Assembly (NCBI RefSeq): GCF_001194135.2
Contig: NC_068997.1
Span: 40,472,457 to 40,536,456 of the forward strand
DNA length: 64,000 bases
Source of the DNA: Octopus bimaculoides
Taxonomy: Eukaryota
Reading direction: 5' to 3'
This document shows, piece by piece, positions 2,001-60,336 of this stretch (its first letter is position 1; each line of letters opens with the position of its first letter). The notes beneath the pieces were generated by a model that saw nothing but the letters and a program-made list of their open reading frames with translations, did no database searches and was not told where the DNA came from. Made by a program: the position numbers and the translations under genes.

Positions 2001-2830
2001 AAGGCTCCATCTTTGGGATGTAGTTAACACAGACAAATTTACATTTGGAACTTTAAAAAGACTTGCATATTTTTATTGTTCCACTCACAGATTTCACTTG
2101 AAATGTACGAATTAACTGATCGATTTCCCTTTTTGGAAATCGCAGTTTATCCAGATTCTCCTTTAAACATTTACGAACAAAACCTCGCGCCCCAATTATT
2201 ATTGATATGAATATGAATTCATAGTATGGATATAGAAGCTGGGGGATTCGAAGCAGTTGTCCATAAATAACCTCTTTTTCTTTGATTTCCGAAGAGATAT
2301 TTACATTTGCAGGGCACCTGACCTCTATCATGGTACAAACATTTGCCCCCTCTGTCCCAAACAACAATATCCGGCCTGTTATATTTACATTTGACAGAAA
2401 TTTTGATGGGAACATTCCACCAGTATTCCTTGAGTTGGTGTTTATTACATAACAGAGGGATTTTCTAGGTCTATTTCAGGACAGTCCTTTTTGTGCATGG
2501 CATTGTAAATTGCTTTAGCAACAAAATCGTGCCACATAGGGAAGTAGTACCGTGACGACATTTTAGGACAGATGCTAATCACATGCGTGATGTCTTCCAC
2601 AGAAACATGACATAGCCTACACATGAGATTGCACCTTGGGATTACAAGAGCGTCACTGTCTCTCTTGTTCACCGGGTATTCTGTGACAGTCTCCTGTTTC
2701 TGGATTGCAAATGCATAACCCTCAAAATGTGATGTGCTTTGTCCAAGAAAGGCTGCGCTTTGTGTCACTTCTACTGTCTTCTTCAAGCTTCCGGACAACA
2801 TACCCATGCATGGTCATTTTTTTAATGTAC
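2001..2830 (-). mobile_element. RLE-type non-LTR retrotransposon (R2 superfamily, R4/Dong-like), 5'-truncated 3' part, decayed
   Basis: ORF 2445-2807 has a CCHC knuckle (CRLCHVSVEDITHVISICP...HDFVAKAIY). ORF 2053-2415 has a restriction-like endonuclease C-terminus (IEVRCPANVNI..EKEVIYGQL..IIIGARG..GTIKICKSF). The 3' UTR is shared with the copy at 25790. Confidence 0.85.
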
Positions 2831-5929: not shown

Positions 5930-6133
5930 TTTTACTTGTTTCAGTCATTTTACTGCGGCCATGCTGGAGCACCACCTTTAGTCGAACAAATCGACCCCAG
6001 GACTTATTCCTTGTAAGCCTAGTACTTATTCTATAGGTCTTTTTGCCGAACCACTAAGTTACTAGGACGTAAACACACCAACATCGGTTGTCAAGCGATG
6101 GTGGGGGAACAAACACAGACACACACAAATATA

Positions 6134-7181: not shown

Positions 7182-7345
7182 AGGTGCAGAGGTAGCTGTA
7201 TGATGAATAGCTTGCTTCCCAACCACAAGTCTCCGGGTTCAGTTGCAGCGTGTGGCACCTTGGGCAGTTGTCTTCTACTATGGCCTCGGGCAAACTAAAG
7301 TCTTGTGAGTGGATTTAGTAGACGGAAACTGAAAGAAGCCCATCG

Positions 7346-7407
<62 letters not shown>

Positions 7408-10946: not shown

Positions 10947-11834
10947 CAAGGTGCGATGGGTAAATTGTCGCCATTTTATAATTTTAGTTTTGTGCATGCA
11001 CGTTTTTGCTTTTGATTTTGTCGACTACACAGTATAGTAGGGTCACTTGGGCACCATCTGTGAGAAAAACAGCCTCATTACGCAATTCACTCTACCAGTA
11101 ATTTGGAAACGACATGCTGTACTGCTTGGCATTCGCGCCGGAAGCTCCATAACGAACAGATGGTAAACACACAGAACAACCGTTGGCGCACCGTATCTCC
11201 AAAACATGTACCGAGAGTGATAAAAATCAAACGCCCAGTCAACATCATGGTGTTTGGAGTTACCACTAGTGATGGCGACGTTATGACTCCTTTCATTTTT
11301 CCACACAGCCTCACACTCAACACGGAGGCCTACATCAAATGTCCGGAGGAGGTAGTGCTGCCCTGGATCAAGAGGATGGCTCCTAGAACACCCTATGTCA
11401 GCCAAAAGGACTCTGCACCACGCCACGCAAGCAGGAAAACGCAGTCATGTCTGTCAGACAATTTCTACAATCACATCACCTCTAACATCTGGCCACCTAA
11501 CTCCCCAGAACGCAACCTCCTTGATTATTATGTGTGGTGTGTAGTTGAGCGAGAAACCAATATGACTCCTTGTAATACCGAAGATGAAATGAAGGCAAGG
11601 AATATGGCAGCATTCACCAACTTAAACAAGGAGACCATCTAGAAAAGTTGCAGGAAATTTCGAAGTCGTCTGGAGGCCATGGTTGAAGCCAATGGCAATT
11701 TTATTGAATAAATTTACTCTTTAGTATTTCTAGATATTTTTATGTAATTTTATTAAACATATCTGTTAAAATGAGATGTCAGTGTTATTTTCATATTTGC
11801 GTAATTTAGACGACACTTTATTCACCTCCCCCTG
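10947..11834 (+). mobile_element. maT (DD37D) Tc1/mariner-superfamily transposon, internally deleted
   Basis: ORF 11103-11642 has QKDSAPRH...WPPNSPERNLLDYYVW with 37 residues between the 2nd and 3rd catalytic D. Imperfect ~28-bp TIRs (CAAGGTGCGATGGGTAAATTGTCG / CGACACTTTATTCACCTCCCCCTG). N-terminal DNA-binding region and first D are deleted. Confidence 0.9.
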
Positions 11835-18030: not shown

Positions 18031-19997
18031 CATCTGAATTATAATGGAAGACAAGACAAAGAATATTATTACATAATAACACATCTTTGAGATGTTGCTT
18101 TGTAATATCAGAGCCGTTTTCCCTATCCATTCCACACGAAGTTGTAACTGTCACATCGATAGCCTTATGCAAATTTTGTATATGCTATGAAATAAGTTGC
18201 TCCAAATTTACTTTAACTCTGTGTTATATGAAACCTAGAAAGCAGAGAATTCAGTTGAAAGACTGCGTTGGTGAAATAATGTTGTAAATAATGTTATGAA
18301 TTAATGTTATATAAAATTATAAATAAAATCATATTGTAATCGATGTATTGAGTTTTGTGGAAAGGAAAATGTTATAAACGTTTCAGGTAGAAGACCTTTG
18401 TCAAGATTATGGAAAGGCATAAAATGGAAGAGGGAAAACGCTAGTGCCAGTGTGTTATTTCTACACACAGACACAATTGAAGATAATGGTAATGTATATG
18501 GATTTATAGCTAGGCTAAAACATGCAAATAATTTTGAATAATCTGAAATCCAGAAACTATGAAATACAGTTCAAAGTTTGCGTCTATGCCTGCGTCAGTG
18601 CAAGTGATCCAATGAAGGAAGATTATAAAATAAAATTTCAGTTCCTTTACCTTTTAGCAGACATAGTATCGGCCGTTCTCTCGTTTTGGTGAAAAACTGG
18701 AGATAGGAATTACGACCAATAATAGCAATTATTGTATCATATCTCTTAGGAGAATAAATAATTGCTTCTTGTTGAATCTCTAAGGTAGAAAGTCTTAGTT
18801 GTTAAATAATATCTGTATTGCTTTGTTTGAACGGAATGGGTCTTTTGACTTGGTTATGCAATATTCTTAAAATAACAATTTCCTTTAACTCTTCATTCAG
18901 ATCACCTCGTCGAGTAGAAACATAGCTGTTTGTTCCATCCGAAGACATTACAAATGAATGGTATCGAGTATTCCAACCAAATACATGGTGTTCAGCTCTA
19001 AATTAATGAAAACCTTATTGTGAATGTCTGCTAGTTAATATTTTAGCCTGAACACAGCAAAGTTGCCTGATTAAAAATGAAGCAGAACTAATCGTCATGT
19101 CCAGTTTTATGTTATTGTCTAATAAATTTCGTCCTACTTCAGGGAGAATATTACTTGATACGAGTAAATAATGACCTCATTCACAAATGATATTCACATT
19201 CTGGGTGGCAATTTAGCTGAAGCTTTGATTCTGGACATTACTATCTTAGTGTATTATACTAATATTTCTACTTTCCGGTCTATTTAACAATATGATCGCT
19301 AGACGTTCAATATTGATTTCTTACATTGACACAACGAGGTGCTCTAGCAATAATTTACAAAACAGCATAGTTAACAGAGACAAATCATATTATGAATGAC
19401 AATTAGCAAGCTCTGAATACGTGAACTTTTAAGGAAAGGTTCGCAATAGTTAGCGGGAGATGGGAAGGCGTCTTCTGAAAATGATGACGCAGTTGTTTTC
19501 TCTGTTGTGTAAGGTTATTGGTGTAAAGTTCGTTATACAGTTTTTATAAACATTGTCTACGTATATATCAATAATTGTATGTTTGTATGATAATGTGTTT
19601 AGACAGGGAATAGGCGAATAGGTCTTTTTATTCAAGTGTTTCACTGGTAAAAGTATAAGAACTCGACAGTCAATTTTGTTCTTATTCTTTTGTATATTTC
19701 ATATATTTATATATTTTTGCTTACTTTGATGCACACTACAATTTATTACTGAAGCTAGTTAAATAAAACGAGATCTCTATGGTCCAACAAGGGGAAGTGG
19801 CATTTACATGATCGCTAGATCTTCGGGAAACAACCAGCTAATTCTCCATCACATTATTTTGTATTGCCGTAAAAAGTGGACACCTTGGTTAATGTAGTCC
19901 TAGATACATTAAGCTTGAAAAAAAGTTACTGATATCCACTTCGATAACTTCATGCAGCATAGCATGGATTTGACAGACTAGTTTCCTTAGCGAGGAC

Positions 19998-20815: not shown

Positions 20816-21460
20816 TTAGAGCAAGCAAGAAAGACGGCCATATTTAACAGAGCTTCAGATTTTATTACTCAGCGGGCAGAAAAAAGCCTTGATCTCCTTT
20901 CAAATCTTGTCAAACCCAAATCAGGAACAGAATATTCGCTTTCTTTCCAAGAGATTGAACGAAAAGAGAGTTAAACTGGTCTAATTTGCACAACACTACA
21001 TGCAATAACAATGTGAATACATAAATAAATTAGTTAATTAATTGTGCACTACATAGCATCGTTTATGCTTTACATTCTAGATTATTAAAAACTGATGTGC
21101 GTGGTAGAATTAATTAATTAATTTAGCCACATTGTTGGCGCCTTCAAGATAATAGACAGTAGACAAAATAGTTTCGCTCCGTTCGAATTTATATGTACTA
21201 TAAATAGCTGTAATCTTATAATTTCTCCGCGAATATTGAGTATCATTAATCGGATGGAGGCATCACAAAATGAGAATCTTGAGAGTTCGATCCTCATTGT
21301 TTTACCCCCCTGGAGAAATACAAACTATGGTGTAACCACTTCTTTTTTTCACAAGAGGCTAATTTTTATACTATTGCAACATAAAGCCTACAAAAAAATT
21401 ATAGATATGAGCATATATAAATACTAAAATACATACACAAGCATGTGTATATACGTATGC

Positions 21461-22408
21461 TGTTGTGGCAGACGCCCCCAGGTGAGAAGTGGGCTGGTCC
21501 ACTACTAATAAATAGTGGACCCACTCAGTAAGTCGGGTCAGTCAGCGAGGTATGTTGTTCGGGCTAGTCACGCAGACGACGAAGTTGCGTCGTTATAATG
21601 CGTGACATATCAGTGGCGACGAAGATTCGGAGCTCGCGCAGTGGAAAAATGTTAAAAATCCCGAGGTGGGATTTGAACTACACACAGTGAAAAGTATATT
21701 TAAAAAAAGATTCTGAAGAAAAAAAATTCAGATAAAACTGGAACTCTAACACAGAACTGAACTAAACACAGTGAAAAATAATATAAGTCCGTTCAAAGGA
21801 CTTTTGTGGAGCAAAAAAGAAAAATAATAATAATAATAAGTCTGTGCGAAGGATTTAACTCAGGTCGCTATATGTTAATAGCGCTACCGGTAAACATTGT
21901 AGACTGGTACTACCTGCGGCATTTTGAAAACAAAAATATGGTTCTGTGTGGAATAAAAATAAAATAATGATAATAATAATAATAATAATAATAATAAGTC
22001 CGTTCGAAGGATTTTAGTCAGGTTGCTATATGTTAATAGCGCTAGTGGTAAACAAAGTAGACTGGTACTACCTGCAGCATTTTGAATATGTATATAATTC
22101 TGTGTGGAACAAGAAAAGTCTAAATGAGAAGAGAAAAATAATTCTGGTTAGAAGAAATAGAAAAGAAAAGAAATAATAATGTGGTGTTGACAGAGTGAAA
22201 AATATATATCTAACTCTGTGTGGAACAAAAAAAATCTAAATAATTCTAACTAGAAGAAAAAGAAATGAAATATATATATAATGTGTTGAAAGAAAAAAAA
22301 CTTAAAGTGGGGAGGTGTTGTGGCGGACGCCTCCAGGTGAGAATTGGGCTGGTCCACTACAAATAAATAGTGGACAGACTCAGTAATTAGGGTAAGTCAG
22401 CGAGGTAT
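21461..22408 (+). mobile_element. Miniature non-coding LTR retroelement (TRIM-like, Gypsy-type priming signals); 3' LTR truncated
   Basis: 5' LTR TGT...ACA 21461-21607. PBS TGGCGACGAAGAT 21614-21626. PPT AAAGTGGGGAGG 22304-22315. 3' LTR 22316-22408 has 9 mismatches in 93 nt against the 5' LTR. Internal 700 bp has no coding remnant. Confidence 0.85.
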
Positions 22409-24636
22409 ATATATATATATATATATACCAAGAACGGGGACAAGGGGTTAAAACACGTGAAACCAGATAAAAACGGAACAAGCAAAAATTTAGCCTACAT
22501 CAGCTTTGTGTGAAGGAAACCTTGCAGTTCCAACAGGTTTAGATAGATTTGATACGTTAATGGCGTTAAAAAGACATTGGATATGTTTGTTGGGTAATTA
22601 ATGGAGACGCGATGGCAAAGAAGGTGAAACTAAAAGTGAGAGCTTTGCGATTGGGATGAGGGAAAAGCAAGGTGTGAGGAAAAAAAGTATGCTTGAGACT
22701 AGCGACAAGAATAAGTGGAGAAAACAAAAAACCAAAACCTGTGTCTGTTGATGGTGAACGTAAATATAAGGATGAATTAACGAGATAAAATAATAGAATA
22801 ACACAAGGTAACTTGTACAACGCAGAAGAATGCTTGGACGTTATCTTTAAACAAGTAATGTTCGTTTGGTGAGCTAAACGGTAAAACAGAATCATCGGTA
22901 CAGTGGATGCAGGGAAAGCTGAAAACGAAGGGGAGCAGAGAACACAGGGGATACATAGTAGTGGGGTGGGGGGAAGGAAAAAAGTAGAGGATAGAAAGAA
23001 AATAGAAAGAAAAGAGAAAGAGAGAGAGAGAGAGAGAGAGGGAATGGAAATATATATGTGTTTAGTTGCTTTTGCGTGTATACGTATGGGAGTGTATATA
23101 CATATACACAAATATACATACACACACACACACACACACATATATACATATATATGCATACATATATATTTATATATATATNNNNNNNNNNNNNNNNNNN
23201 NNNNNNNNNNNNNNNNNNNNNNNNNNNNNNNNNNNNNNNNNNNNNNNNNNNNNNNNNNNNNNNNNNNNNNNNNNNNNNNNNNNNNNNNNNNNNNNNNNNN
23301 NNNNNNNNNNNNNNNNNNNNNNNNNNNNNNNNNNNNNNNNNNNNNNNNNNNNNNNNNNNNNNNNNNNNNNNNNNNNNNNNNNNNNNNNNNNNNNNNNNNN
23401 NNNNNNNNNNNNNNNNNNNNNNNNNNNNNNNNNNNNNNNNNNNNNNNNNNNNNNNNNNNNNNNNNNNNNNNNNNNNNNNNNNNNNNNNNNNNNNNNNNNN
23501 NNNNNNNNNNNNNNNNNNNNNNNNNNNNNNNNNNNNNNNNNNNNNNNNNNNNNNNNNNNNNNNNNNNNNNNNNNNNNNNNNNNNNNNNNNNNNNNNNNNN
23601 NNNNNNNNNNNNNNNNNNNNNNNNNNNNNNNNNNNNNNNNNNNNNNNNNNNNNNNNNNNNNNNNNNNNNNNNNNNNNNNNNNNNNNNNNNNNNNNNNNNN
23701 NNNNNNNNNNNNNNNNNNNNNNNNNNNNNNNNNNNNNNNNNNNNNNNNNNNNNNNNNNNNNNNNNNNNNNNNNNNNNNNNNNNNNNNNNNNNNNNNNNNN
23801 NNNNNNNNNNNNNNNNNNNNNNNNNNNNNNNNNNNNNNNNNNNNNNNNNNNNNNNNNNNNNNNNNNNNNNNNNNNNNNNNNNNNNNNNNNNNNNNNNNNN
23901 NNNNNNNNNNNNNNNNNNNNNNNNNNNNNNNNNNNNNNNNNNNNNNNNNNNNNNNNNNNNNNNNNNNNNNNNNNNNNNNNNNNNNNNNNNGTGTGTGTGT
24001 GTGTGTGTGTGTGAGTGTATGCCTGCGCGGGTTTTGCTTCTGTGTGGATTGCACGCCAAATCAGTCACCGAGAAATCTTACAATTCTTCAAACGTCTACT
24101 CAACGGATTACGTTTGAAGATTAACGTCTCCCCCATCGTTCCATCTCTCTGTTATCTTTCTTTCCCCCACCTCCTCTTCCTGCTTGCTTTACTTGGAAAC
24201 CTTATCTTCTCTATGGTTACACGTATCGATCTCCTGGCCAGCTACCTAAGTCGACACTACTGCCAACACAGAGTAGCAAGCACTTAAACATTGACCCTTC
24301 TAGCTGCAATTCACCTTTTCTTTTGTCGTGTATTCGCTCTCCATGAACCTCGCTGCTGCAGCCAACGCTGAGGCCTACACATATTTCTATTTCAATCTTT
24401 CTTTGGAACAATTTCAGACTATATTAACTCCTCTGTAATCGATTTGTTTTTCTTTTGCTTCTTTAGAACTCTGTCCGTGACGGTCATGCCGTAACCGCAT
24501 CGAACTGTTACATAGATTAAAGGCTAACACATCTATTCCATCAGCACAGATTACGATAAGAAACACAACTGGTGGCCTCACTCACACACGCATACATACG
24601 CATGTATGTATGTATATATGTATGTATGCATGTATG

Positions 24637-26289: not shown

Positions 26290-28060
26290 TGACCTTTCAA
26301 CTTTAGATATCCTCACCCAATTAACCTAGGTTGGTTTGATCAGTCTCAGACTTGCGTTCTACCAAAACAGTCATTGGATATGCTCTCTTAATCCAAAGCC
26401 ATTTGGTGGTTTTCCTTACATTTTCTTGTCTAGAGTGAATTGCTTTCTTTTCCATTTCGTTGAAACCAAATCGTTGAGACCTTAGCGGACTGAGTAACTG
26501 ACAAAATCTCTATAGGTTCATAGTATATTTTCAACCCATTGCGATGGCAATTCTCTGCCAGTTTCTTTTACTTTTCGTTGGCTCTTGTAAAAAGATCCCA
26601 GGGTATTGCAACTTCCAGCATGATCAGTGGTGCTGTTGGCTTAGAGATGATGTTCATGTCTTTCCAGAGCAATGTTGATACTCTATGCTGGGAGTCTTGA
26701 GCTGTCTACCGAGATCGATATACAGCTACCAGTCAAAAGCTGTGAAAATGGAGCTTGTCCATGATTTTGGTTATGGATAGCTTTTCTCTCTCGATTTTAC
26801 AATCCTAATCGCTTTTTCGGGAGGCGTGGTGCTATTTACCTTCCCTGACGGCAGTGGCTAACTCGCAGTAACTCACTTGATCACCTGGTCATGGTAGCAA
26901 TAATAGCGTCTTTCTCCAAGGAATTTTAAGCAGTTGCTAGGAAAATGTTCTAAAAATCCTTTTTCAGAGTAGTGTGCAGAATGATATCTCGTTTTTACCC
27001 CAAATGTGATGGTTAGTTAGGCTAACTTCCCATTGTAACACCCTATACGGAAAAAAAACTGGCATTATGGAATTCAGCCAGTATGTTGTTTAAGCAAATA
27101 ATCTAGCAATGTCTCACACTCTCTCACCCTGTCCATGTTCCCAGCAGTTTTAGCCACATAGAACTGCTCACTCTCTCGCCCAATACGATTGCTCGGGTCT
27201 TTTCCTGAATAAGACAATATTTCTCTCTTCTCTAGTTCTTACCAATCTAGTTCTCTCCATGAATTCCCTCAATCCCACTCAACCAAGTATCCTGTTGCCC
27301 ACCAGTTCGTTTTGCCTTACAGGTGACTCTACCACGTGCACTCATTTTTCAGCCTTCAATTCCCACCCTGTTTTCACTCTGAAACCAGATCATGACACTA
27401 TGTAGTACCTGGAGTCCGTCTACTGTGGAAACCACTTTTGTGTTGCCTGAAATTCTTCAAGGAAACCAAAGGATGTTGTCTATACGATGTTACTTGTCCC
27501 ATACAGTGCTGCATTTCTGAGGCTGCAAGAAAACGCCAGACACTTGTATAAAGAGCCACTGATTTTTATTTCGAGGATCTCGACTATTATCAGTGGAATC
27601 GTGTAAAAGAGCAGGAGTCATAAAAGTCTAAGGGCAGGATAAAATGTTGACTTAAGGTTTTGTAATCCTACTTGGTCGTCCTTGATAAACCAGCCATCAA
27701 GATCTTTTCTGAATTCTTGAATAGCAACAAATTCTTTTGAATTCGATTTAAAGAACTTTCCCATTCTCTTTACTGGTTTGATCTATTATTGATAGGCTGG
27801 AGTACTTGATATTGAGAAATGGAATTTGTCAGTCTCCTTCCCGTTCTACAGAACTATGGACCTTGGCTTGGCAGACTTAAAACTCATCCATGACCAGCTA
27901 ATAAGTTCCTCAAGAACTTGTTGGATATACTTACACCCTCGGTCCAGTATCATTGTGATGGTAATATCACCCATAGATTTTGATAGAGGGTTCTTGAAAA
28001 GTAGGCTCCTACATCCTGCTTCGGCTATTTGAGCACCATGATTATCAAGGGGAAAATGAA
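26290..28060 (-). mobile_element. HERO-clade RLE non-LTR retrotransposon, 5'-truncated pseudogene
   Basis: RT motifs SMGDITIT..GCKYIQQVLEELISWSWMSFKSAKPRSIVL, zinc-knuckle region LEHFPSNCLKFLGERRYYCYHDQV, and C-terminal KTTKWLWIKR. Confidence 0.85.
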
Positions 28061-28975
28061 TAACAGAAATAATACAACTTAATGTATTTTTCAGGCAAAT
28101 TGTGGCAAAAGAAAAGGAAAAAGGAAACGAAAGCAAATGAAAAATTCTATCATTCTTGTTATCGCCCGAGAGAAATATTTGAAAACGCCGGAATTCCGAA
28201 TCAATATTTTTATTTTTCATAGACCGAGAGGAGTAAAAATATTCTTCTTCATAGATTTTTACCACTGATAAGTTTGAGTCTATAACGTCATTTGCTGTTT
28301 ACCTATAAGTAGAGGCATTTTTTATCATTGCTTGTTTCTTGCGTATTTAAACGGGGGTAATTATCTGTTATTTTCTATCTAAATACATTTGTGCTAAGTG
28401 TGTCAAGAGTCCTATTTCTACTGTTCTGGATATTGAATTATAGTATAGAAATTTTCTTGGTCTTCTTTTTATTTGTCTACGATGGAGACACCATCAATAC
28501 ACACGATGTGTATTGTAAGTGTGCATCTAGGTACAACATTGAATTTTTATTATGGCCGCATAGAACGTCATGAACGAAGGGCCAAAGGAGTGCAGATAAC
28601 CAATACATATTTTCCTGGTATAATTTTCGATATATGTTATGCATATGACTATATCGGGGAAAAAAGAAGCATTGATAGAAAAGATAACGTTAGAATAGAA
28701 TCGTGTTTCAGTATATGTGGGTGTGTAATACAGAAAAGCCTTTAGCAGCTAAAGAAATAAATATATAGATATATATTTTTTTTAATAAATATATACACAT
28801 TTTTTCATTCTTAAAATTTGTTTTGTTATATTTTCAATACAGTCTTGCTTAATTTCTTTGTGAATCTTTTGGATATACCAAAAGATATTCACAACAAATT
28901 ATATATATATATACACGCACGTACACACACACACACAGATATGAACATTCATACATATAGACACATACATACACA

Positions 28976-31984: not shown

Positions 31985-32967
31985 TTGTCATGTTGGGGAA
32001 CAGACGACAATCAGATATACTAAATGAGAAGAATAGGTAGGGTGATCTACCAATGCAAAGCCACCATTACGCACAGCATCTATTGAAACCAAGGACCTGT
32101 TCACTGGAGCAATTTCCTGAAGAAACAAGAAACTTTTCATCAGCTTTCCTGGGCAGTTAGTCTTGGTAACCTTCCGTAACAGCCTTAGTAAATCGGTATA
32201 GTACTCTCCATTGATGGTGTGGTACCTTTCAAGACTATAAAAACGATTCCTCTTGCATCCCAAATAACTGAGGCTGACAACTTCCTTGCAGATGAAACGA
32301 CCTTGGCCTGCTTTGGGAAAAGAGAGCAGGGCGTTTTTACTGCATGGGTTGTCTCTTTGCCTCTGGCACAAAGTGATGAACCAAACACTCATCCAGAATT
32401 AGGAAACGTTGAAGGAAACCCTCTAGATCTGTCTCAAACAATGTCATAGTTTCCCGTGATGTGACCAGCATTCTGTGCACAGGGAGCAGAAATCTTCGTT
32501 ACCGTGAAGAACATTCTCTCCTCTCTCACGCGATACGGCTAAGATCATTGAGTATTTCATTTATAGTCAATCGCCCGTCATCCATCAACTTGTGGTGAAC
32601 ACGATCAATGTTTTCCTCGGTGGTGGCTGTTGCATGGCTCGTCCAGACGCTGGATTGTCTTCAAGACCCTTCCTTCTCCTCCTAAATTCAGCTGCCCACT
32701 TTTGCACTAAGGATACAAATAGCGCGCGATCCCCTAATTTAGCAATCATGTCTGCATGAATGTCGTTTGAAACTAAACCCTTTTTCTGTTGATACTTTAT
32801 AACAATACGATACCAGATTTTGCCCCTTCTTTGGAAAATCAGATGCCAGTTTACCCGGAAAGAAACAATTCAGTTATTAAGTAGGTTTGAAATTAATGCA
32901 TGCAAAATTTCACAGCTCTACCATGACTTTTTCATAGTCAACCTATGAATTTGTCAACCCACCTTCG
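31985..32967 (-). mobile_element. mariner transposon, 3'-truncated, frameshifted pseudogene
   Basis: IWYRIVIKYQQKKGL..VQKWAAEFRR..LEDNPASGR, KAKVVSSARKLSASVIWDARGI, TINGEYYTDLLRLLR..FLFLQEIAP and LVDHPTYSSHL. TIR end TA-CGAAGGTGGGTTGACAAATTCATAG at 32967. Confidence 0.9.
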
Positions 32968-42667: not shown

Positions 42668-43057
42668 GCACAATAAGTAGCTTGCTTTCCAACCACATGG
42701 TTCCGGGTTTAGTTCCACTACGTGGCACCTCGGGAAAGTGTCTTCTACTATAGACCCGGGCCGACCAAAGCCTTGTGAATTGATTTGGTAGACGGAAACT
42801 GAAAGAAGCCCGTCGTATATATGTATGTATGTATGTGTGTGAATATGTTGTGTATCTGTGTTTGTCCCCCAACATCGTTTGACAACCGATGCTGGTGTGT
42901 TTAGGATCCCGTAACTTAGCGGTTCGGCAAAAGAGACCGATAGAATAAGTACTAGGCTTACAAAGAATAAGTCATGAGGTCGATTTGATTCGACTAAAGG
43001 CGCTGCTCCAGGGTGGCCGCAGTCAAATGACCGAAACAAGTAAAAGAATAAAAGAAT
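42668..43057 (+). mobile_element. SINE family A, near full length
   Basis: Head AAGTAGCTTGCTTTCCAACCACATGGTTCCGGGTTTAGTTCC, internal (TA/TG)n, tail GAAACAAGTAAAAGAATAAAAGAATA. Confidence 0.92.
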
Positions 43058-52733: not shown

Positions 52734-53638
52734 TAGGTGCGGGCGTAGCTGTGTGGTAAGAAGCTTGCTTCCTGACCACATGGTTTGGGTTCAGTCCCAC
52801 TGCATAACACCTTGGGCAAGTGTCTTCCATTATAGCCTCGGGCTGACAAAAGCCTTGTGAGTGGATTTAGTAGATGGAAACTGAAAGAGGCCCGTCGCGT
52901 ATATATATATATATATNNNNNNNNNNNNNNNNNNNNNNNNNNNNNNNNNNNNNNNNNNNNNNNNNACATACATTTATATGTATACATACATGCATATATG
53001 GGTACAGGACAGCAAAAAAAAGTTAAACACAATGAGAAACGAAAACATAAAAACGAAAACAGAAAACGAACTTTTTTTGCCCACTGCCTTCCTAAAGAAA
53101 AGACAGGTTTTTTCTGTCTCTTCTCTCATTCCACGTCTACATAGCGTTCATAATAATTTTTCTATCATCTTGACTCAACAGCCCTCACCGTTTGTTTTTA
53201 CTGTCTTGTTCTCACTGTCCTGTTCTTGTTAACACTTTCACACTCCACAAAAAATTCAAAATTTTATCTAATTTGCTTTGCGGGAAGGACTGTTCCAACG
53301 AATTTGCGCATTGTCCTTGCCTTCGAAACGCGGAGTAGATGGAACAGGGACAACTGACGAACGGGTATACTCTTTATGTTGCATGTCTCGTTTCTCTGTT
53401 TGTTTGTTTTTTGTTGTTCGAAAAGAGTTCGTTTACCTGTTTTCGTTTTTATGTATTCGTTTCTCATTGTGTTTAACTTTTTTTTTATGTCCTATACCCA
53501 TATATGCATGTATGTATACATATAGATGTAGGTTTGCACATATATGTATGGATATATGCATATATTTATATATAATTTATATTATTATATGATCGAACAC
53601 CACGCATCCTTTCCAAGTAAGTTTTATCTTTCTCTGTA

Positions 53639-53685: not shown

Positions 53686-53718
<33 letters not shown>

Positions 53719-53869
53719 ACGCCACCGTAACTTAGCAGTTCGGCAAAAGAACCGGAAGAATAAGTATTTGGCTTACAAAGAATGTCTTGGGGTCGATTTG
53801 TTCGACTAAAGGCGGTGTTCCAGCATGGCCGTAGTCAAATGAATGAAACAAGTAAAAAAATAAAAGAAT
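52734..53869 (+). mobile_element. SINE family A split by a foldback insertion
   Basis: Head 52734-52916 and tail 53712-53869 are separated by microsatellite, two short gaps and the 52969-53530 foldback. Confidence 0.75.
52969..53530. mobile_element. 562-bp foldback element with ~108-bp inverted arms
   Basis: Arm 52969-53075 versus reverse complement of 53424-53530: highly similar (TATGTATACATACATGCATATATGGGTAyAGGAC..AAAGTTAAACACAATGAGAAACGAAwACATAAAAACGAAAACAG). Confidence 0.88.
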
Positions 53870-58579: not shown

Positions 58580-58841
58580 CAGTTGTTCTCAACCGGGGTC
58601 AATATGGCCCTTAGGGGTCAATACAAGGTTTTGTGATGCCATAAATTGGCTATATTTCTGTGGCTGTGTGGTAAGTTAGGTGTAGGAGTGGCTGTGTGGT
58701 AAGTAGCTTGCTTACCAACCACATGGTTCTGGGTTCATTCCCACTGCATGGCACCTTCGGCAAGTGTCTTCTACTATAGCCTCGGGCCGACCAAAGCCTT
58801 GTGAGTGGAGTTGGTAGATGGAAACTGAAAGAAGCCCGTCG

Positions 58842-58892
<51 letters not shown>

Positions 58893-59114
58893 NNNNNNNN
58901 NNNNNNNNNNNNNNNNNNNNNNNNNNNNNNNNNNNNNNNNNNNNNAAGTTAGGTGTAGGAGTGGCTGTGTGGTAAGTAGCTTGCTTACCAACCACATGGT
59001 TCTGGGTTCATTCCCACTGCATGGCACCTTCGGCAAGTGTCTTCTACTATAGCCTCGGGCCGACCAAAGCCTTGTGAGTGGAGTTGGTAGATGGAAACTG
59101 AAAGAAGCCCGTCG

Positions 59115-59170
<56 letters not shown>

Positions 59171-59548
59171 TGTGTGTTTGTGTATGTGTGTGTGTGTGCG
59201 TGTGTATGTTTGTGTGTCTGTGTTTGTCCCCCCAGCATCGCTTGATAACCGATGGTGGTGTGTTTACGTCCGCGTAACTTAGCAGTTCAGCAAAAGTAAC
59301 CGATAGAATAAGTACTAGGCTTCCAAAGAATAAGTCCTGGGGTAGATTTGCTCGACTAAAAGGCGGTGCTCCAGCATGACCGCAGTCAAATGACTGAAAC
59401 ACGTAAAAGAGTAATTCCTAATAATAATTAATCATAAAAATATAATAGGAGCTTTTAGACGTCGAATGATTATGAGGGTCTTCCCCACTGAGTAAAATAG
59501 GAATCAAAGGGTTCAATAGGTAAAAGTAAAAATGGTTGAGAACCACCA
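58580..59548. mobile_element. hAT (Charlie-like) MITE interrupted by SINE family A
   Basis: 15-bp imperfect TIRs CAGTTGTTCTCAACC / GGTTGAGAACCACCA, with 8-bp TSD GTTTAATA / GCTTAATA. A related left end occurs at ~60407. Confidence 0.8.
58660..59411 (+). mobile_element. SINE family A, full length; 5' half assembled twice across a gap
   Basis: AGGTGTAGGAGTGGCTGTGTGGTAAGTAGC..GAAAGAAGCCCGTCG occurs identically at 58678 and 58951. Tail TGACTGAAACACGTAAAAGAG. Confidence 0.92.
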
Positions 59549-59837: not shown

Positions 59838-60041
59838 AGGCGTAGGAGTGGCTGTGTGGTAAGTAGCTTGCTTACCAACCACATGGTTCCGGGTTCAGTC
59901 CCACTGCGTAGCACCTTGGGAAACTGTCTTCTACTATAGCCTCGGGCCGACCAAAGCCTTGACAGTGGATTTGGTAGACGGAAACTGAAAGAAGCCCGTC
60001 GTATATATGTATGTATATATATGTGTGTGTGTGTCTGTGTG

Positions 60042-60082
<41 letters not shown>

Positions 60083-60336
60083 NNNNNNNNNNNNNNNNNN
60101 NNNNNNNNNNNNTCATCAAATGGTGATGATATGTGTGTGTGTGTGTGTCTGTGTTTGTCTCCCCAACATCGCTTGACAACCGATGCTGGTGTGTGTACGT
60201 CCCCGTAACTTAGCGGTTCGGCAAAAGAGGCCGATAGAATAAGTACTAGGCTTACAAAGAATAAGTCCTGGGGTCGATTTGCTCGACTAAAGAGCTGTTC
60301 CAGCAAATGACTGAAATGACTGAAACAAGTAAAAGA
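59838..60336 (+). mobile_element. SINE family A, full length
   Basis: AGGCGTAGGAGTGGCTGTGTGGTAAGTAGC head, B-box-like GGTTCAGTCC, internal (TG)n with gap, tail TGACTGAAACAAGTAAAAGAG. Confidence 0.92.

What the first reader, a model, noticed from the sequence alone, without database searches (positions are those of the whole stretch)
21461..22408. TRIM-like miniature LTR retroelement with tRNA-Ser(GCU)-type PBS
Seen: a ~147-bp LTR (TGT..ACA), PBS TGGCGACGAAGAT, a purine tract AAAGTGGGGAGG abutting the second LTR, 90% LTR identity over 93 nt, and a 700-bp non-coding interior made of internal duplications (~155 bp twice, ~100 bp twice). Established: TGGCGACGAGGAT is complementary to the 3' end of eukaryotic tRNA-Ser(GCU) and is used by Mag-type Gypsy elements. 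TRIMs are known from plants and a few animals including bivalves. Inference: a non-autonomous Gypsy parasite; I do not recall one described from cephalopods.
Basis: partly seen in the sequence, partly recalled or inferred. Interest (0 to 1): 0.75.

Follow-up and report, generated by a model that had tools for sequence, protein, structure and literature searches.

The report
Decayed miniature LTR retroelement in octopus
This is an old, broken copy of a roughly 1-kb non-coding LTR retrotransposon (TRIM-type by structure, primed by tRNA-Ser) in an octopus genome; it is an ordinary kind of genomic parasite, of modest interest only because none has been described from cephalopods.

Summary
The described sequence features are all present. 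A 93-nt direct repeat (90% identical) starts with TG in both copies. TGGCGACGAAGAT lies just after the inferred end of the 5' repeat and matches the complement of the tRNA-Ser(GCU) 3' end at 12 of 13 positions. The purine tract AAAGTGGGGAGG abuts the 3' repeat. The 703-bp AT-rich interior is built from two pairs of duplicated blocks and has no coding capacity.

The 3' repeat is cut at 93 nt by a (TA)n run. The LTR length (about 152 bp), its CA end and the target-site duplication therefore cannot be read from this copy.

Shared repeats with Octopus bimaculoides DNA show that the host is an octopus.

The LTR has no tRNA-, 5S- or hammerhead-like module, so the element is not a Helenus, Ajax, Cassandra or retrozyme type.

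My best reading is a dead copy, roughly 14 million years old, of a TRIM-class non-autonomous LTR retrotransposon. It was probably mobilised in trans by a Gypsy element that uses tRNA-Ser(GCU).

Two things remain untested: multi-copy family status and the autonomous partner. None of the collections available holds cephalopod non-coding DNA, so my negative searches say nothing about copy number.

Verdict: interpretation partly supported; new member of a known kind; low to moderate interest.

The parts
21461..21612 (+). 5' LTR (152 bp inferred). 21461-21553 is supported by the repeat; 21554-21612 is assigned from the PBS position. An alternative end is ACA at 21607.
   Evidence: GC content is 52%, against 31% for the interior.
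21490..21527 (+). LTR hairpin (4+9 bp) with AATAAA (21507-21512) in its loop. It is a possible TATA-like or polyadenylation signal element. It is retained in the 3' LTR at about 22345-22382.
   Evidence: -19.2 and -18.4 kcal/mol for the two copies. The function is inferred.
21567..21606 (+). 15-bp interrupted stem-loop in the putative U5, just upstream of the PBS.
   Evidence: -22.5 kcal/mol.
21614..21626 (+). Primer-binding site TGGCGACGAAGAT, matching the complement of the tRNA-Ser(GCU) 3' end at 12/13. It lies 1 nt after the TCA end of the LTR.
   Evidence: Literature: (PMC10886601 Fig. S2C).
21613..22315 (+). Non-coding, A/T-rich internal domain (703 bp).
   Evidence: stops in all frames, no Pfam hit; no homologues.
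21814..21959 (+). Interior block A, copy 1, preceded by (AAT)n.
21972..22115 (+). Interior block A, copy 2 (84% identical to copy 1), preceded by (AAT)n at 21952-21997.
22085..22186 (+). Interior block B, copy 1.
22201..22288 (+). Interior block B, copy 2 (72% identical to copy 1).
22304..22315 (+). Polypurine tract AAAGTGGGGAGG, abutting the 3' LTR.
22316..22408 (+). 3' LTR, first 93 nt only (90% identical to the 5' LTR).
22406..22427 (.). (TA)11 microsatellite at the truncation point of the 3' LTR. Nothing downstream matches LTR positions 94-152.

Best explanation
The region is a dead, 3'-truncated copy of a short non-autonomous LTR retrotransposon of the TRIM class, inserted in an octopus genome.

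Inferred life cycle of the live element:
- The 152-bp LTR drove Pol II transcription of an RNA of less than 1 kb.
- That RNA was packaged by the gag-pol products of an autonomous Ty3/Gypsy element, most likely one of the Mag lineage.
- Host tRNA-Ser(GCU) annealed to the PBS and primed minus-strand DNA.
- The G-rich purine tract primed the plus strand.
- The partner's integrase inserted the TG...CA-ended DNA.

This copy has since accumulated about 10% LTR-LTR divergence and one PBS mismatch. It also carries internal duplications and microsatellites, and it has lost the last ~59 nt of its 3' LTR.

Shown here: the architecture, the lack of coding capacity, the PBS type and the octopus host. Inferred: mobilisation in trans, the identity of the partner, the transcription signals, and the existence of a family.
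For: The 93-nt direct repeat has E 3e-31 and starts exactly at TG in both copies.

The PBS matches at 12/13, on the correct strand, within 60-65 nt of the last duplicated base. The whole window expects only 0.37 sites even at <=2 mismatches. By my estimate, a <=1-mismatch site in that position for any of ~45 tRNA ends has probability below 1e-3 (inference).

The same PBS core TGGCGACGAGG, with the same 1-nt spacer, occurs in the bivalve TRIMs Helenus-3/-6_PiIm and is assigned there to tRNA-Ser-GCT. The TRIM PBS matches highlighted in that figure are only about 7-12 nt long.

The PPT abuts the 3' LTR and resembles the biv-TRIM PPT GGGGAGA.

There is no coding capacity.

The LTR is GC-rich (52%) and structured, with two strong hairpins, while the interior is 31% GC.

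The size is below the 1,500-bp limit of Gao et al. 2016.

The host is an octopus: several repeat families are 84-89% identical to O. bimaculoides CM046625.1.
Against: Only one copy has been seen, and it is incomplete. There is no TSD, the CA end is unconfirmed, and there is no solo LTR or second copy in 64 kb.

No autonomous partner was found; the window contains no Gypsy coding remnants.

The 703-bp interior is long for a TRIM and may have been inflated by copy-specific duplications.

LTR differences are 2 transitions against 7 transversions, which is unusual for neutral decay, although n = 9.

The promoter and poly(A) assignment within so short an LTR is speculative.

The A. californica tRNA-Ser-GCT 3' end as printed in the machine-read PDF lacks one C relative to the sequence I expect from other animals. 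The octopus tRNA itself was not available.
Confidence: 0.62

Rival explanations
1. This is a one-off internally deleted or rearranged derivative of a larger LTR retrotransposon (autonomous Gypsy or LARD-like). It is not a member of an amplifying miniature family; the short length is private to this copy.
For: Only one copy is visible. The interior is visibly rearranged, with two duplicated block pairs and microsatellites. The copy is old and already truncated at its 3' end.
Against: No gag, pol or integrase remnant survives anywhere in the 703-bp interior, in any frame. At ~10% divergence, a coding remnant of 50 aa or more next to the PPT or leader would normally still be detectable. The PBS and PPT are both retained at the exact junctions, as in elements selected for mobilisation.
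Confidence: 0.22
2. This is a local tandem duplication (period 855 bp), or an assembly artefact in a microsatellite-rich draft, that mimics an LTR element by chance. The PBS- and PPT-like strings would be coincidental.
For: The second repeat copy ends in a (TA)n run. An N gap lies 750 bp downstream. The draft is full of gaps flanked by microsatellites. Purine runs are common in the A-rich interior.
Against: Four independent signals are in register on one strand: TG at both repeat starts, a tRNA-Ser PBS at 12/13, a G-rich PPT abutting the repeat, and a GC-rich structured repeat against an AT-rich interior. The PBS alone is expected fewer than 0.4 times per 128 kb even at 2 mismatches.
Confidence: 0.06
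3. The element is a Pol III-driven or ribozyme-bearing miniature retroelement: Helenus/Ajax/Cassandra 'TRIMp3', or a retrozyme.
For: The closest PBS and terminus matches in the literature are bivalve Helenus families. Retrozymes also have LTR-PBS-PPT layouts.
Against: ARAGORN finds no tRNA. There are no Rfam hits at gathering thresholds. Even at E<=10 there is no tRNA, 5S, snRNA or hammerhead hit in 21200-22500. There is no sequence homology to Helenus-2/3/5/6_PiIm beyond the termini and the PBS; alignment scores sit at the shuffle mean.
Confidence: 0.03

Closest known systems
Helenus-3_PiIm / Helenus-6_PiIm (bivalve TRIMs; Kojima 2024, PMC10886601)
   Same: These are molluscan hosts and miniature LTR-PBS-PPT-LTR elements. 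Their PBS is TGGCGACGAGG, assigned to tRNA-Ser-GCT, with a 1-nt spacer after the LTR. They have a G-rich PPT. The Helenus-6 LTR starts TGTTGTGGG, against TGTTGTGGC here.
   Different: Their LTRs carry a tRNA-derived Pol III promoter; this LTR has none. Their interiors are ~133 bp, against 703 bp here. There is no alignable homology outside the termini and the PBS.
biv-TRIM (Satovic et al. 2019, PMC6934838)
   Same: It is a molluscan TRIM without coding capacity. Its PPT, GGGGAGA, resembles GTGGGGAGG here. Truncated copies and tandem arrangements are common in that family.
   Different: biv-TRIM has 202-218-bp repeats, a 77-80-bp interior and no canonical PBS. The element here has a ~152-bp LTR, a 703-bp interior and a canonical 3'-end tRNA PBS.
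Plant TRIMs and SMARTs (Witte 2001; Gao et al. 2016, PMC4717578)
   Same: The defining architecture and size class are the same, and both depend on autonomous elements.
   Different: They are from a different kingdom and unrelated in sequence. Plant TRIMs mostly use tRNA-Met (my own knowledge). Family status is demonstrated there by copies and TSDs, which is not the case here.
Mag-lineage Ty3/Gypsy elements (e.g. locust Kokol, PMC3391268; Bombyx mag, from my own knowledge)
   Same: They use a tRNA-Ser PBS, TG...CA LTRs, and a PPT next to the 3' LTR.
   Different: These are autonomous elements of 5 kb or more with gag-pol. No such coding sequence is present here.
LARDs (large retrotransposon derivatives)
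   Same: They are non-coding, non-autonomous LTR elements.
   Different: LARDs are several kb long with long LTRs (my own knowledge); this element is ~1 kb.

Membership tests
TRIM (terminal-repeat retrotransposon in miniature) | Two terminal direct repeats (LTRs) in the same orientation | tested here: met
   93 nt, 90% identical, E 3e-31. The 3' copy is truncated.
TRIM | LTR termini TG...CA | tested here: inconclusive
   TG is present at both repeat starts. The CA end (TCA 21612 or ACA 21607) is seen only in the 5' copy, and its position is inferred from the PBS.
TRIM | PBS complementary to a tRNA, immediately downstream of the 5' LTR | tested here: met
   TGGCGACGAAGAT matches the tRNA-Ser(GCU) complement at 12/13. 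A bivalve TRIM precedent exists. The octopus tRNA was not available.
TRIM | Polypurine tract immediately upstream of the 3' LTR | tested here: met
   AAAGTGGGGAGG at 22304-22315 abuts TG at 22316.
TRIM | Small size (<1,000 bp per Kojima 2024; <1,500 bp per Gao 2016) | tested here: met
   948 bp observed. About 1,007 bp if the 3' LTR is restored to 152 bp, which is under the Gao limit and at the Kojima limit.
TRIM | No retrotransposon proteins encoded | tested here: met
   10-32 stops per frame and a longest open frame of 87 codons. No Pfam hit in six frames. No homologue at E<=10 among 5.8 billion proteins.
TRIM | [quoted passage not shown] | not testable with these tools
   No further copy in the window. 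The metagenome, GTDB and IMG/VR scans were empty, but those collections do not hold cephalopod genomes.
TRIM | 4-6 bp target-site duplication | tested here: inconclusive
   The 3' end of the element is missing and no remnant lies downstream. The 5' flank reads ...GTATGC.
Helenus / Ajax / Cassandra (TRIMp3) | tRNA- or 5S rRNA-derived Pol III promoter inside the LTR | tested here: not met
   no tRNA or 5S match even at E<=10.
Retrozyme | Hammerhead ribozyme in the terminal repeats | tested here: not met
   No hammerhead family among the Rfam hits at E<=10.
Gypsy (Mag-lineage)-dependent non-autonomous element | An autonomous element in the same genome that shares LTR ends, PBS and PPT | not testable with these tools
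   There is no Gypsy coding remnant in the window or in the two fetched loci. Octopus Gypsy elements could not be reached.

The most novel reading that the evidence does not exclude
This copy represents the first TRIM family of cephalopods. It would be a Pol II-type miniature LTR element that hijacks a tRNA-Ser(GCU)-primed Mag-like Gypsy. Its LTR terminus (TGTTGTGG) and PBS are shared with bivalve TRIMs, hinting at an ancient molluscan TRIM/Gypsy partnership. Its LTR presents AAUAAA in a conserved hairpin loop.
Probability: 0.4. Interest if true: 0.4.

Novelty: new member of a known kind. Interest (0 to 1): 0.3.

Why it matters
If a genome-wide search confirms it as a family, it would extend TRIMs to cephalopods. 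So far animal TRIMs are reported only from hymenopterans, taeniid cestodes, bivalves and the taxa surveyed by Kojima 2024. It would also give octopus repeat libraries a class that standard LTR pipelines tend to miss. In addition, it would point to which Gypsy lineage is or was active in octopus. It would not change any concept: the mechanism and architecture are textbook.

Tried and rejected
1. Looking for other copies by DNA. LTR core patterns gave 0 hits against JGI metagenome contigs, GTDB genomes and IMG/VR. This is uninformative, because none of these holds cephalopod DNA.

2. Looking for other copies through called ORFs. I concatenated the translations of 19 selected element ORFs from both strands and searched 5.8 billion proteins; there were 0 hits at E<=10. 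This is also uninformative for copy number. Even the window's mariner ORF found no near-identical octopus ORFs, so octopus non-coding DNA is not represented there.

3. Sensitive in-window searches (blastn with word size 7, nhmmer) for solo LTRs or for the missing 59 nt of the 3' LTR found nothing. The flanks are not repeats.

4. A Pol III or ribozyme module in the LTR was rejected.

5. Homology to the bivalve Helenus TRIMs that share the PBS was rejected, apart from the termini and the PBS.

6. Searching papers for the PBS string returned only unrelated primer sequences.

7. Motif scans and Pfam scans of window ORFs for Gypsy remnants that could serve as a query found none.

8. The bacterial promoter/terminator scan is irrelevant to a eukaryotic element.

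9. I considered randomly sampling the O. bimaculoides genome through protein look-ups. I rejected it because about 200 kb of reachable DNA gives under 10% power even for a 1,000-copy family.

Full report
OBSERVATION. The repeat finder and a self-BLAST give one significant long direct repeat in the region: 21461-21553 against 22316-22408, 93 nt, 84/93 identical, E 3e-31. No third copy exists anywhere in the 64-kb window, even with word size 7 or nhmmer.

Both copies begin at TGTTGTGG, and the homology starts exactly there; the preceding bases are C and G. TGGCGACGAAGAT lies at 21614-21626. AAAGTGGGGAGG lies at 22304-22315 and directly abuts the TG of the second repeat.

The interior contains two pairs of duplicated blocks. 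One pair is 21814-21959 / 21972-22115 (84%), and each copy is preceded by an (AAT)n run. The other pair is 22085-22186 / 22201-22288 (72%).

One part of the description is inference, not observation: the '~147-bp LTR ... ACA'. The 3' repeat is cut after 93 nt by a (TA)11 run at 22406-22427. Nothing downstream resembles the remaining ~59 nt. An N gap begins about 750 bp further on, at 23182.

IS IT MORE THAN CHANCE? The repeat itself is far beyond chance. The canonical tRNA-Ser(GCU) PBS TGGCGACGAGGAT has exactly one site within 2 mismatches in the whole window on both strands, and that is this site, with 1 mismatch. Shuffles give 0.37 sites per window at <=2 mismatches.

Restricting to <=1 mismatch, to the correct strand and to the ~70 nt after the repeat, and allowing any of ~45 tRNA ends, I estimate a probability below 1e-3 (inference).

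Several other signals sit in register with it:
- TG at both repeat starts;
- a G-rich purine tract at the exact junction;
- a sharp compositional contrast, with the LTR at 52% GC and the interior at 31%;
- two strong hairpins confined to the LTR, at 21490-21527 and 21567-21606.

Together these make a chance tandem duplication unlikely.

WHAT IT IS. The layout on the + strand is: LTR (21461-21612), 1-nt spacer, PBS, 703-bp interior ending in the PPT, then the 3' LTR (first 93 nt only). I place the LTR end at TCA 21612, not ACA 21607. My reason is that the two bivalve TRIMs with the same PBS core (Helenus-3_PiIm and Helenus-6_PiIm) have exactly one nucleotide between the LTR and TGG. This cannot be verified from the present copy.

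The element is non-coding:
- Every frame has 10-32 stop codons, and the longest open stretch is 87 codons.
- None of the six frames hits a Pfam family (the best E-value is 0.075, to an unrelated methyltransferase).
- A concatenation of 19 selected ORF translations from both strands finds nothing at E<=10 among 5.8 billion proteins.

The interior is therefore not a recognisable gag-pol remnant.

The LTR carries no small-RNA module. ARAGORN finds no tRNA in the window. Rfam gives nothing at gathering thresholds. Even at E<=10 the only hits are microsatellite noise, with no tRNA, 5S, snRNA or hammerhead match. That excludes the Helenus/Ajax/Cassandra 'TRIMp3' types and retrozymes.

HOST. The window is AT-rich, full of microsatellites and N gaps. 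A mariner-like ORF at 11103-11642 has as its best named hit an Octopus bimaculoides protein (62% identity).

The 20-kb O. bimaculoides locus around that gene (GCA_001194135.2, CM046625.1) shares several short interspersed repeat families with the window at 84-89% identity. An ENA contig carrying a related mariner does not share them. The window therefore comes from an octopus, either O. bimaculoides or a close relative.

PBS AND PARTNER. Kojima 2024 (PMC10886601, Fig. S2C) lists the PBSs of molluscan TRIMs. Helenus-3_PiIm and Helenus-6_PiIm read (T/C)TGGCGACGAGGTGAAC and are assigned to tRNA-Ser-GCT. The complementary stretches highlighted in that figure are typically only about 7-12 nt. The 9 perfect nucleotides here, plus GAT after one mismatch, are in the normal range.

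The machine-read figure prints the Aplysia tRNA end one C shorter than the sequence I know from insects and vertebrates (...CCTCGTCG-CCA, my own knowledge). The octopus tRNA could not be obtained.

In that paper, only Gypsy elements share PBS regions with animal TRIMs, and animal Helenus make 4-bp TSDs. A Mag-lineage Gypsy of locust (Kokol) uses a tRNA-Ser PBS (PMC3391268).

Helenus-6_PiIm also starts TGTTGTGGG, like the LTR here (TGTTGTGGC). Eight nucleotides is only a lead, but LTR tips are what integrase reads. Outside the tips and the PBS there is no homology to these bivalve elements; local alignment scores equal the shuffle mean. A Gypsy, possibly Mag-like, partner is therefore a reasonable inference, not a result.

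MECHANISM (inferred from established LTR-retrotransposon biology, summarised). The live element would be transcribed from its 5' LTR and packaged in trans by the partner's Gag. It would be reverse-transcribed from tRNA-Ser(GCU) annealed to the PBS, with strand transfer through R and plus-strand priming at the PPT. The partner's integrase would then insert it through the TG...CA ends.

Within the LTR, AATAAA (21507-21512) sits in the loop of a 13-bp hairpin that is kept in both LTR copies. It could act as a TATA-like box, a poly(A) signal, or both. TCAGT initiator-like motifs follow 20-35 nt downstream. A 15-bp stem-loop fills the putative U5 just before the PBS. These assignments are speculative.

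AGE AND STATE. The two LTRs differ at 9 of 93 positions (JC/K2P 0.104; 2 transitions, 7 transversions). I used the calibration implied by the O. vulgaris repeat study (JC 0.09 corresponds to about 25 My; PMC13282606), that is about 3.6e-9 per site per year. This puts the insertion at roughly 14 My ago (inference).

The copy is dead. It has a truncated 3' LTR, a mismatched PBS, microsatellite growth and internal duplications. The identity of the block-A duplication (84-89%) is similar to that of the LTRs. I cannot say whether it belongs to the family consensus or arose in this copy.

MEMBERSHIP. Gao et al. 2016 (PMC4717578) define a TRIM by three criteria:
- (1) Size below 1,500 bp: met (948 bp observed, ~1,007 bp restored).
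- (3) No retrotransposon proteins: met.

Criterion 2 was out of reach for these reasons. The DNA collections available (JGI metagenomes, GTDB genomes, IMG/VR) returned nothing and do not contain cephalopod genomes. The protein-based route also returned nothing. It does not represent octopus non-coding DNA either, since even the mariner ORF found no near-identical octopus ORFs. These negatives must not be read as 'single copy'. The TSD cannot be read because the 3' end is missing.

COMPARISON AND NOVELTY. In what it works like, this is a standard TRIM/SMART-type parasite of an LTR retrotransposon. It is closest in PBS and termini to bivalve Helenus families, but it lacks their Pol III module. 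It is closest in host phylum to biv-TRIM, but it has a canonical PBS and a much longer interior.

Full-text searches found no TRIM described from cephalopods. A 2026 curated O. vulgaris repeat annotation lists Ty3-like and 'other LTR' elements but no TRIM class. Kojima 2024 lists animal TRIMs only from hymenopterans, cestodes and bivalves, plus the Helenus and Ajax hosts he reports. Repbase and Dfam could not be queried.

If confirmed as a family, it is a new member of a known kind.

VERDICT. Interest is low to moderate.

Noticed in passing
window 5930-6072, 42909-43052, 53717-53857, 59264-59414, 60196-60335 (and a second family at 7269-7375, 52820-52916, 58764-58858, 59037-59131, 59925-60022): These are high-copy short interspersed repeats, often adjacent to (CA)n/(TA)n runs. 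They are 84-89% identical to O. bimaculoides CM046625.1 (L002:11250-11400 and 18515-18622). They identify the host as an octopus.
   Followed up: partly
window 11064-11639 (+); 31991-32398 (-) and 32588-32869 (-): These are degenerate mariner-like transposase remnants. The first is 62% identical in protein to O. bimaculoides LOC128250757 and 80% identical in DNA to its locus. None passes a Pfam cut-off.
   Followed up: partly
window 2056-2813 (-); 27849-28298 (-): These are LINE-like ORF remnants: a weak zf-RVT match (E 0.039) and an RT-like motif seen by eye. Neither gave a significant family hit.
   Followed up: partly
window 23182-23990 and many other places: N gaps of several hundred bases are almost always flanked by microsatellites, which is typical of a short-read scaffolded draft. 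The gap about 750 bp downstream of the truncated 3' LTR means a local mis-join cannot be excluded.
   Followed up: no
window 21283-21297: A T-arm-like string, GAGAGTTCGATCCTC, lies about 165 bp upstream of the element and might be a tRNA-derived SINE fragment. No tRNA match appeared even at E<=10.
   Followed up: partly
L001 (ENA ERZ21867824, contig ctg115491l): A 163-kb contig in an ENA 'metagenome' assembly carries a mariner 75% identical in DNA to the window's copy, but none of the octopus SINE-like repeats. It is presumably a different animal host; the organism was not identified.
   Followed up: no
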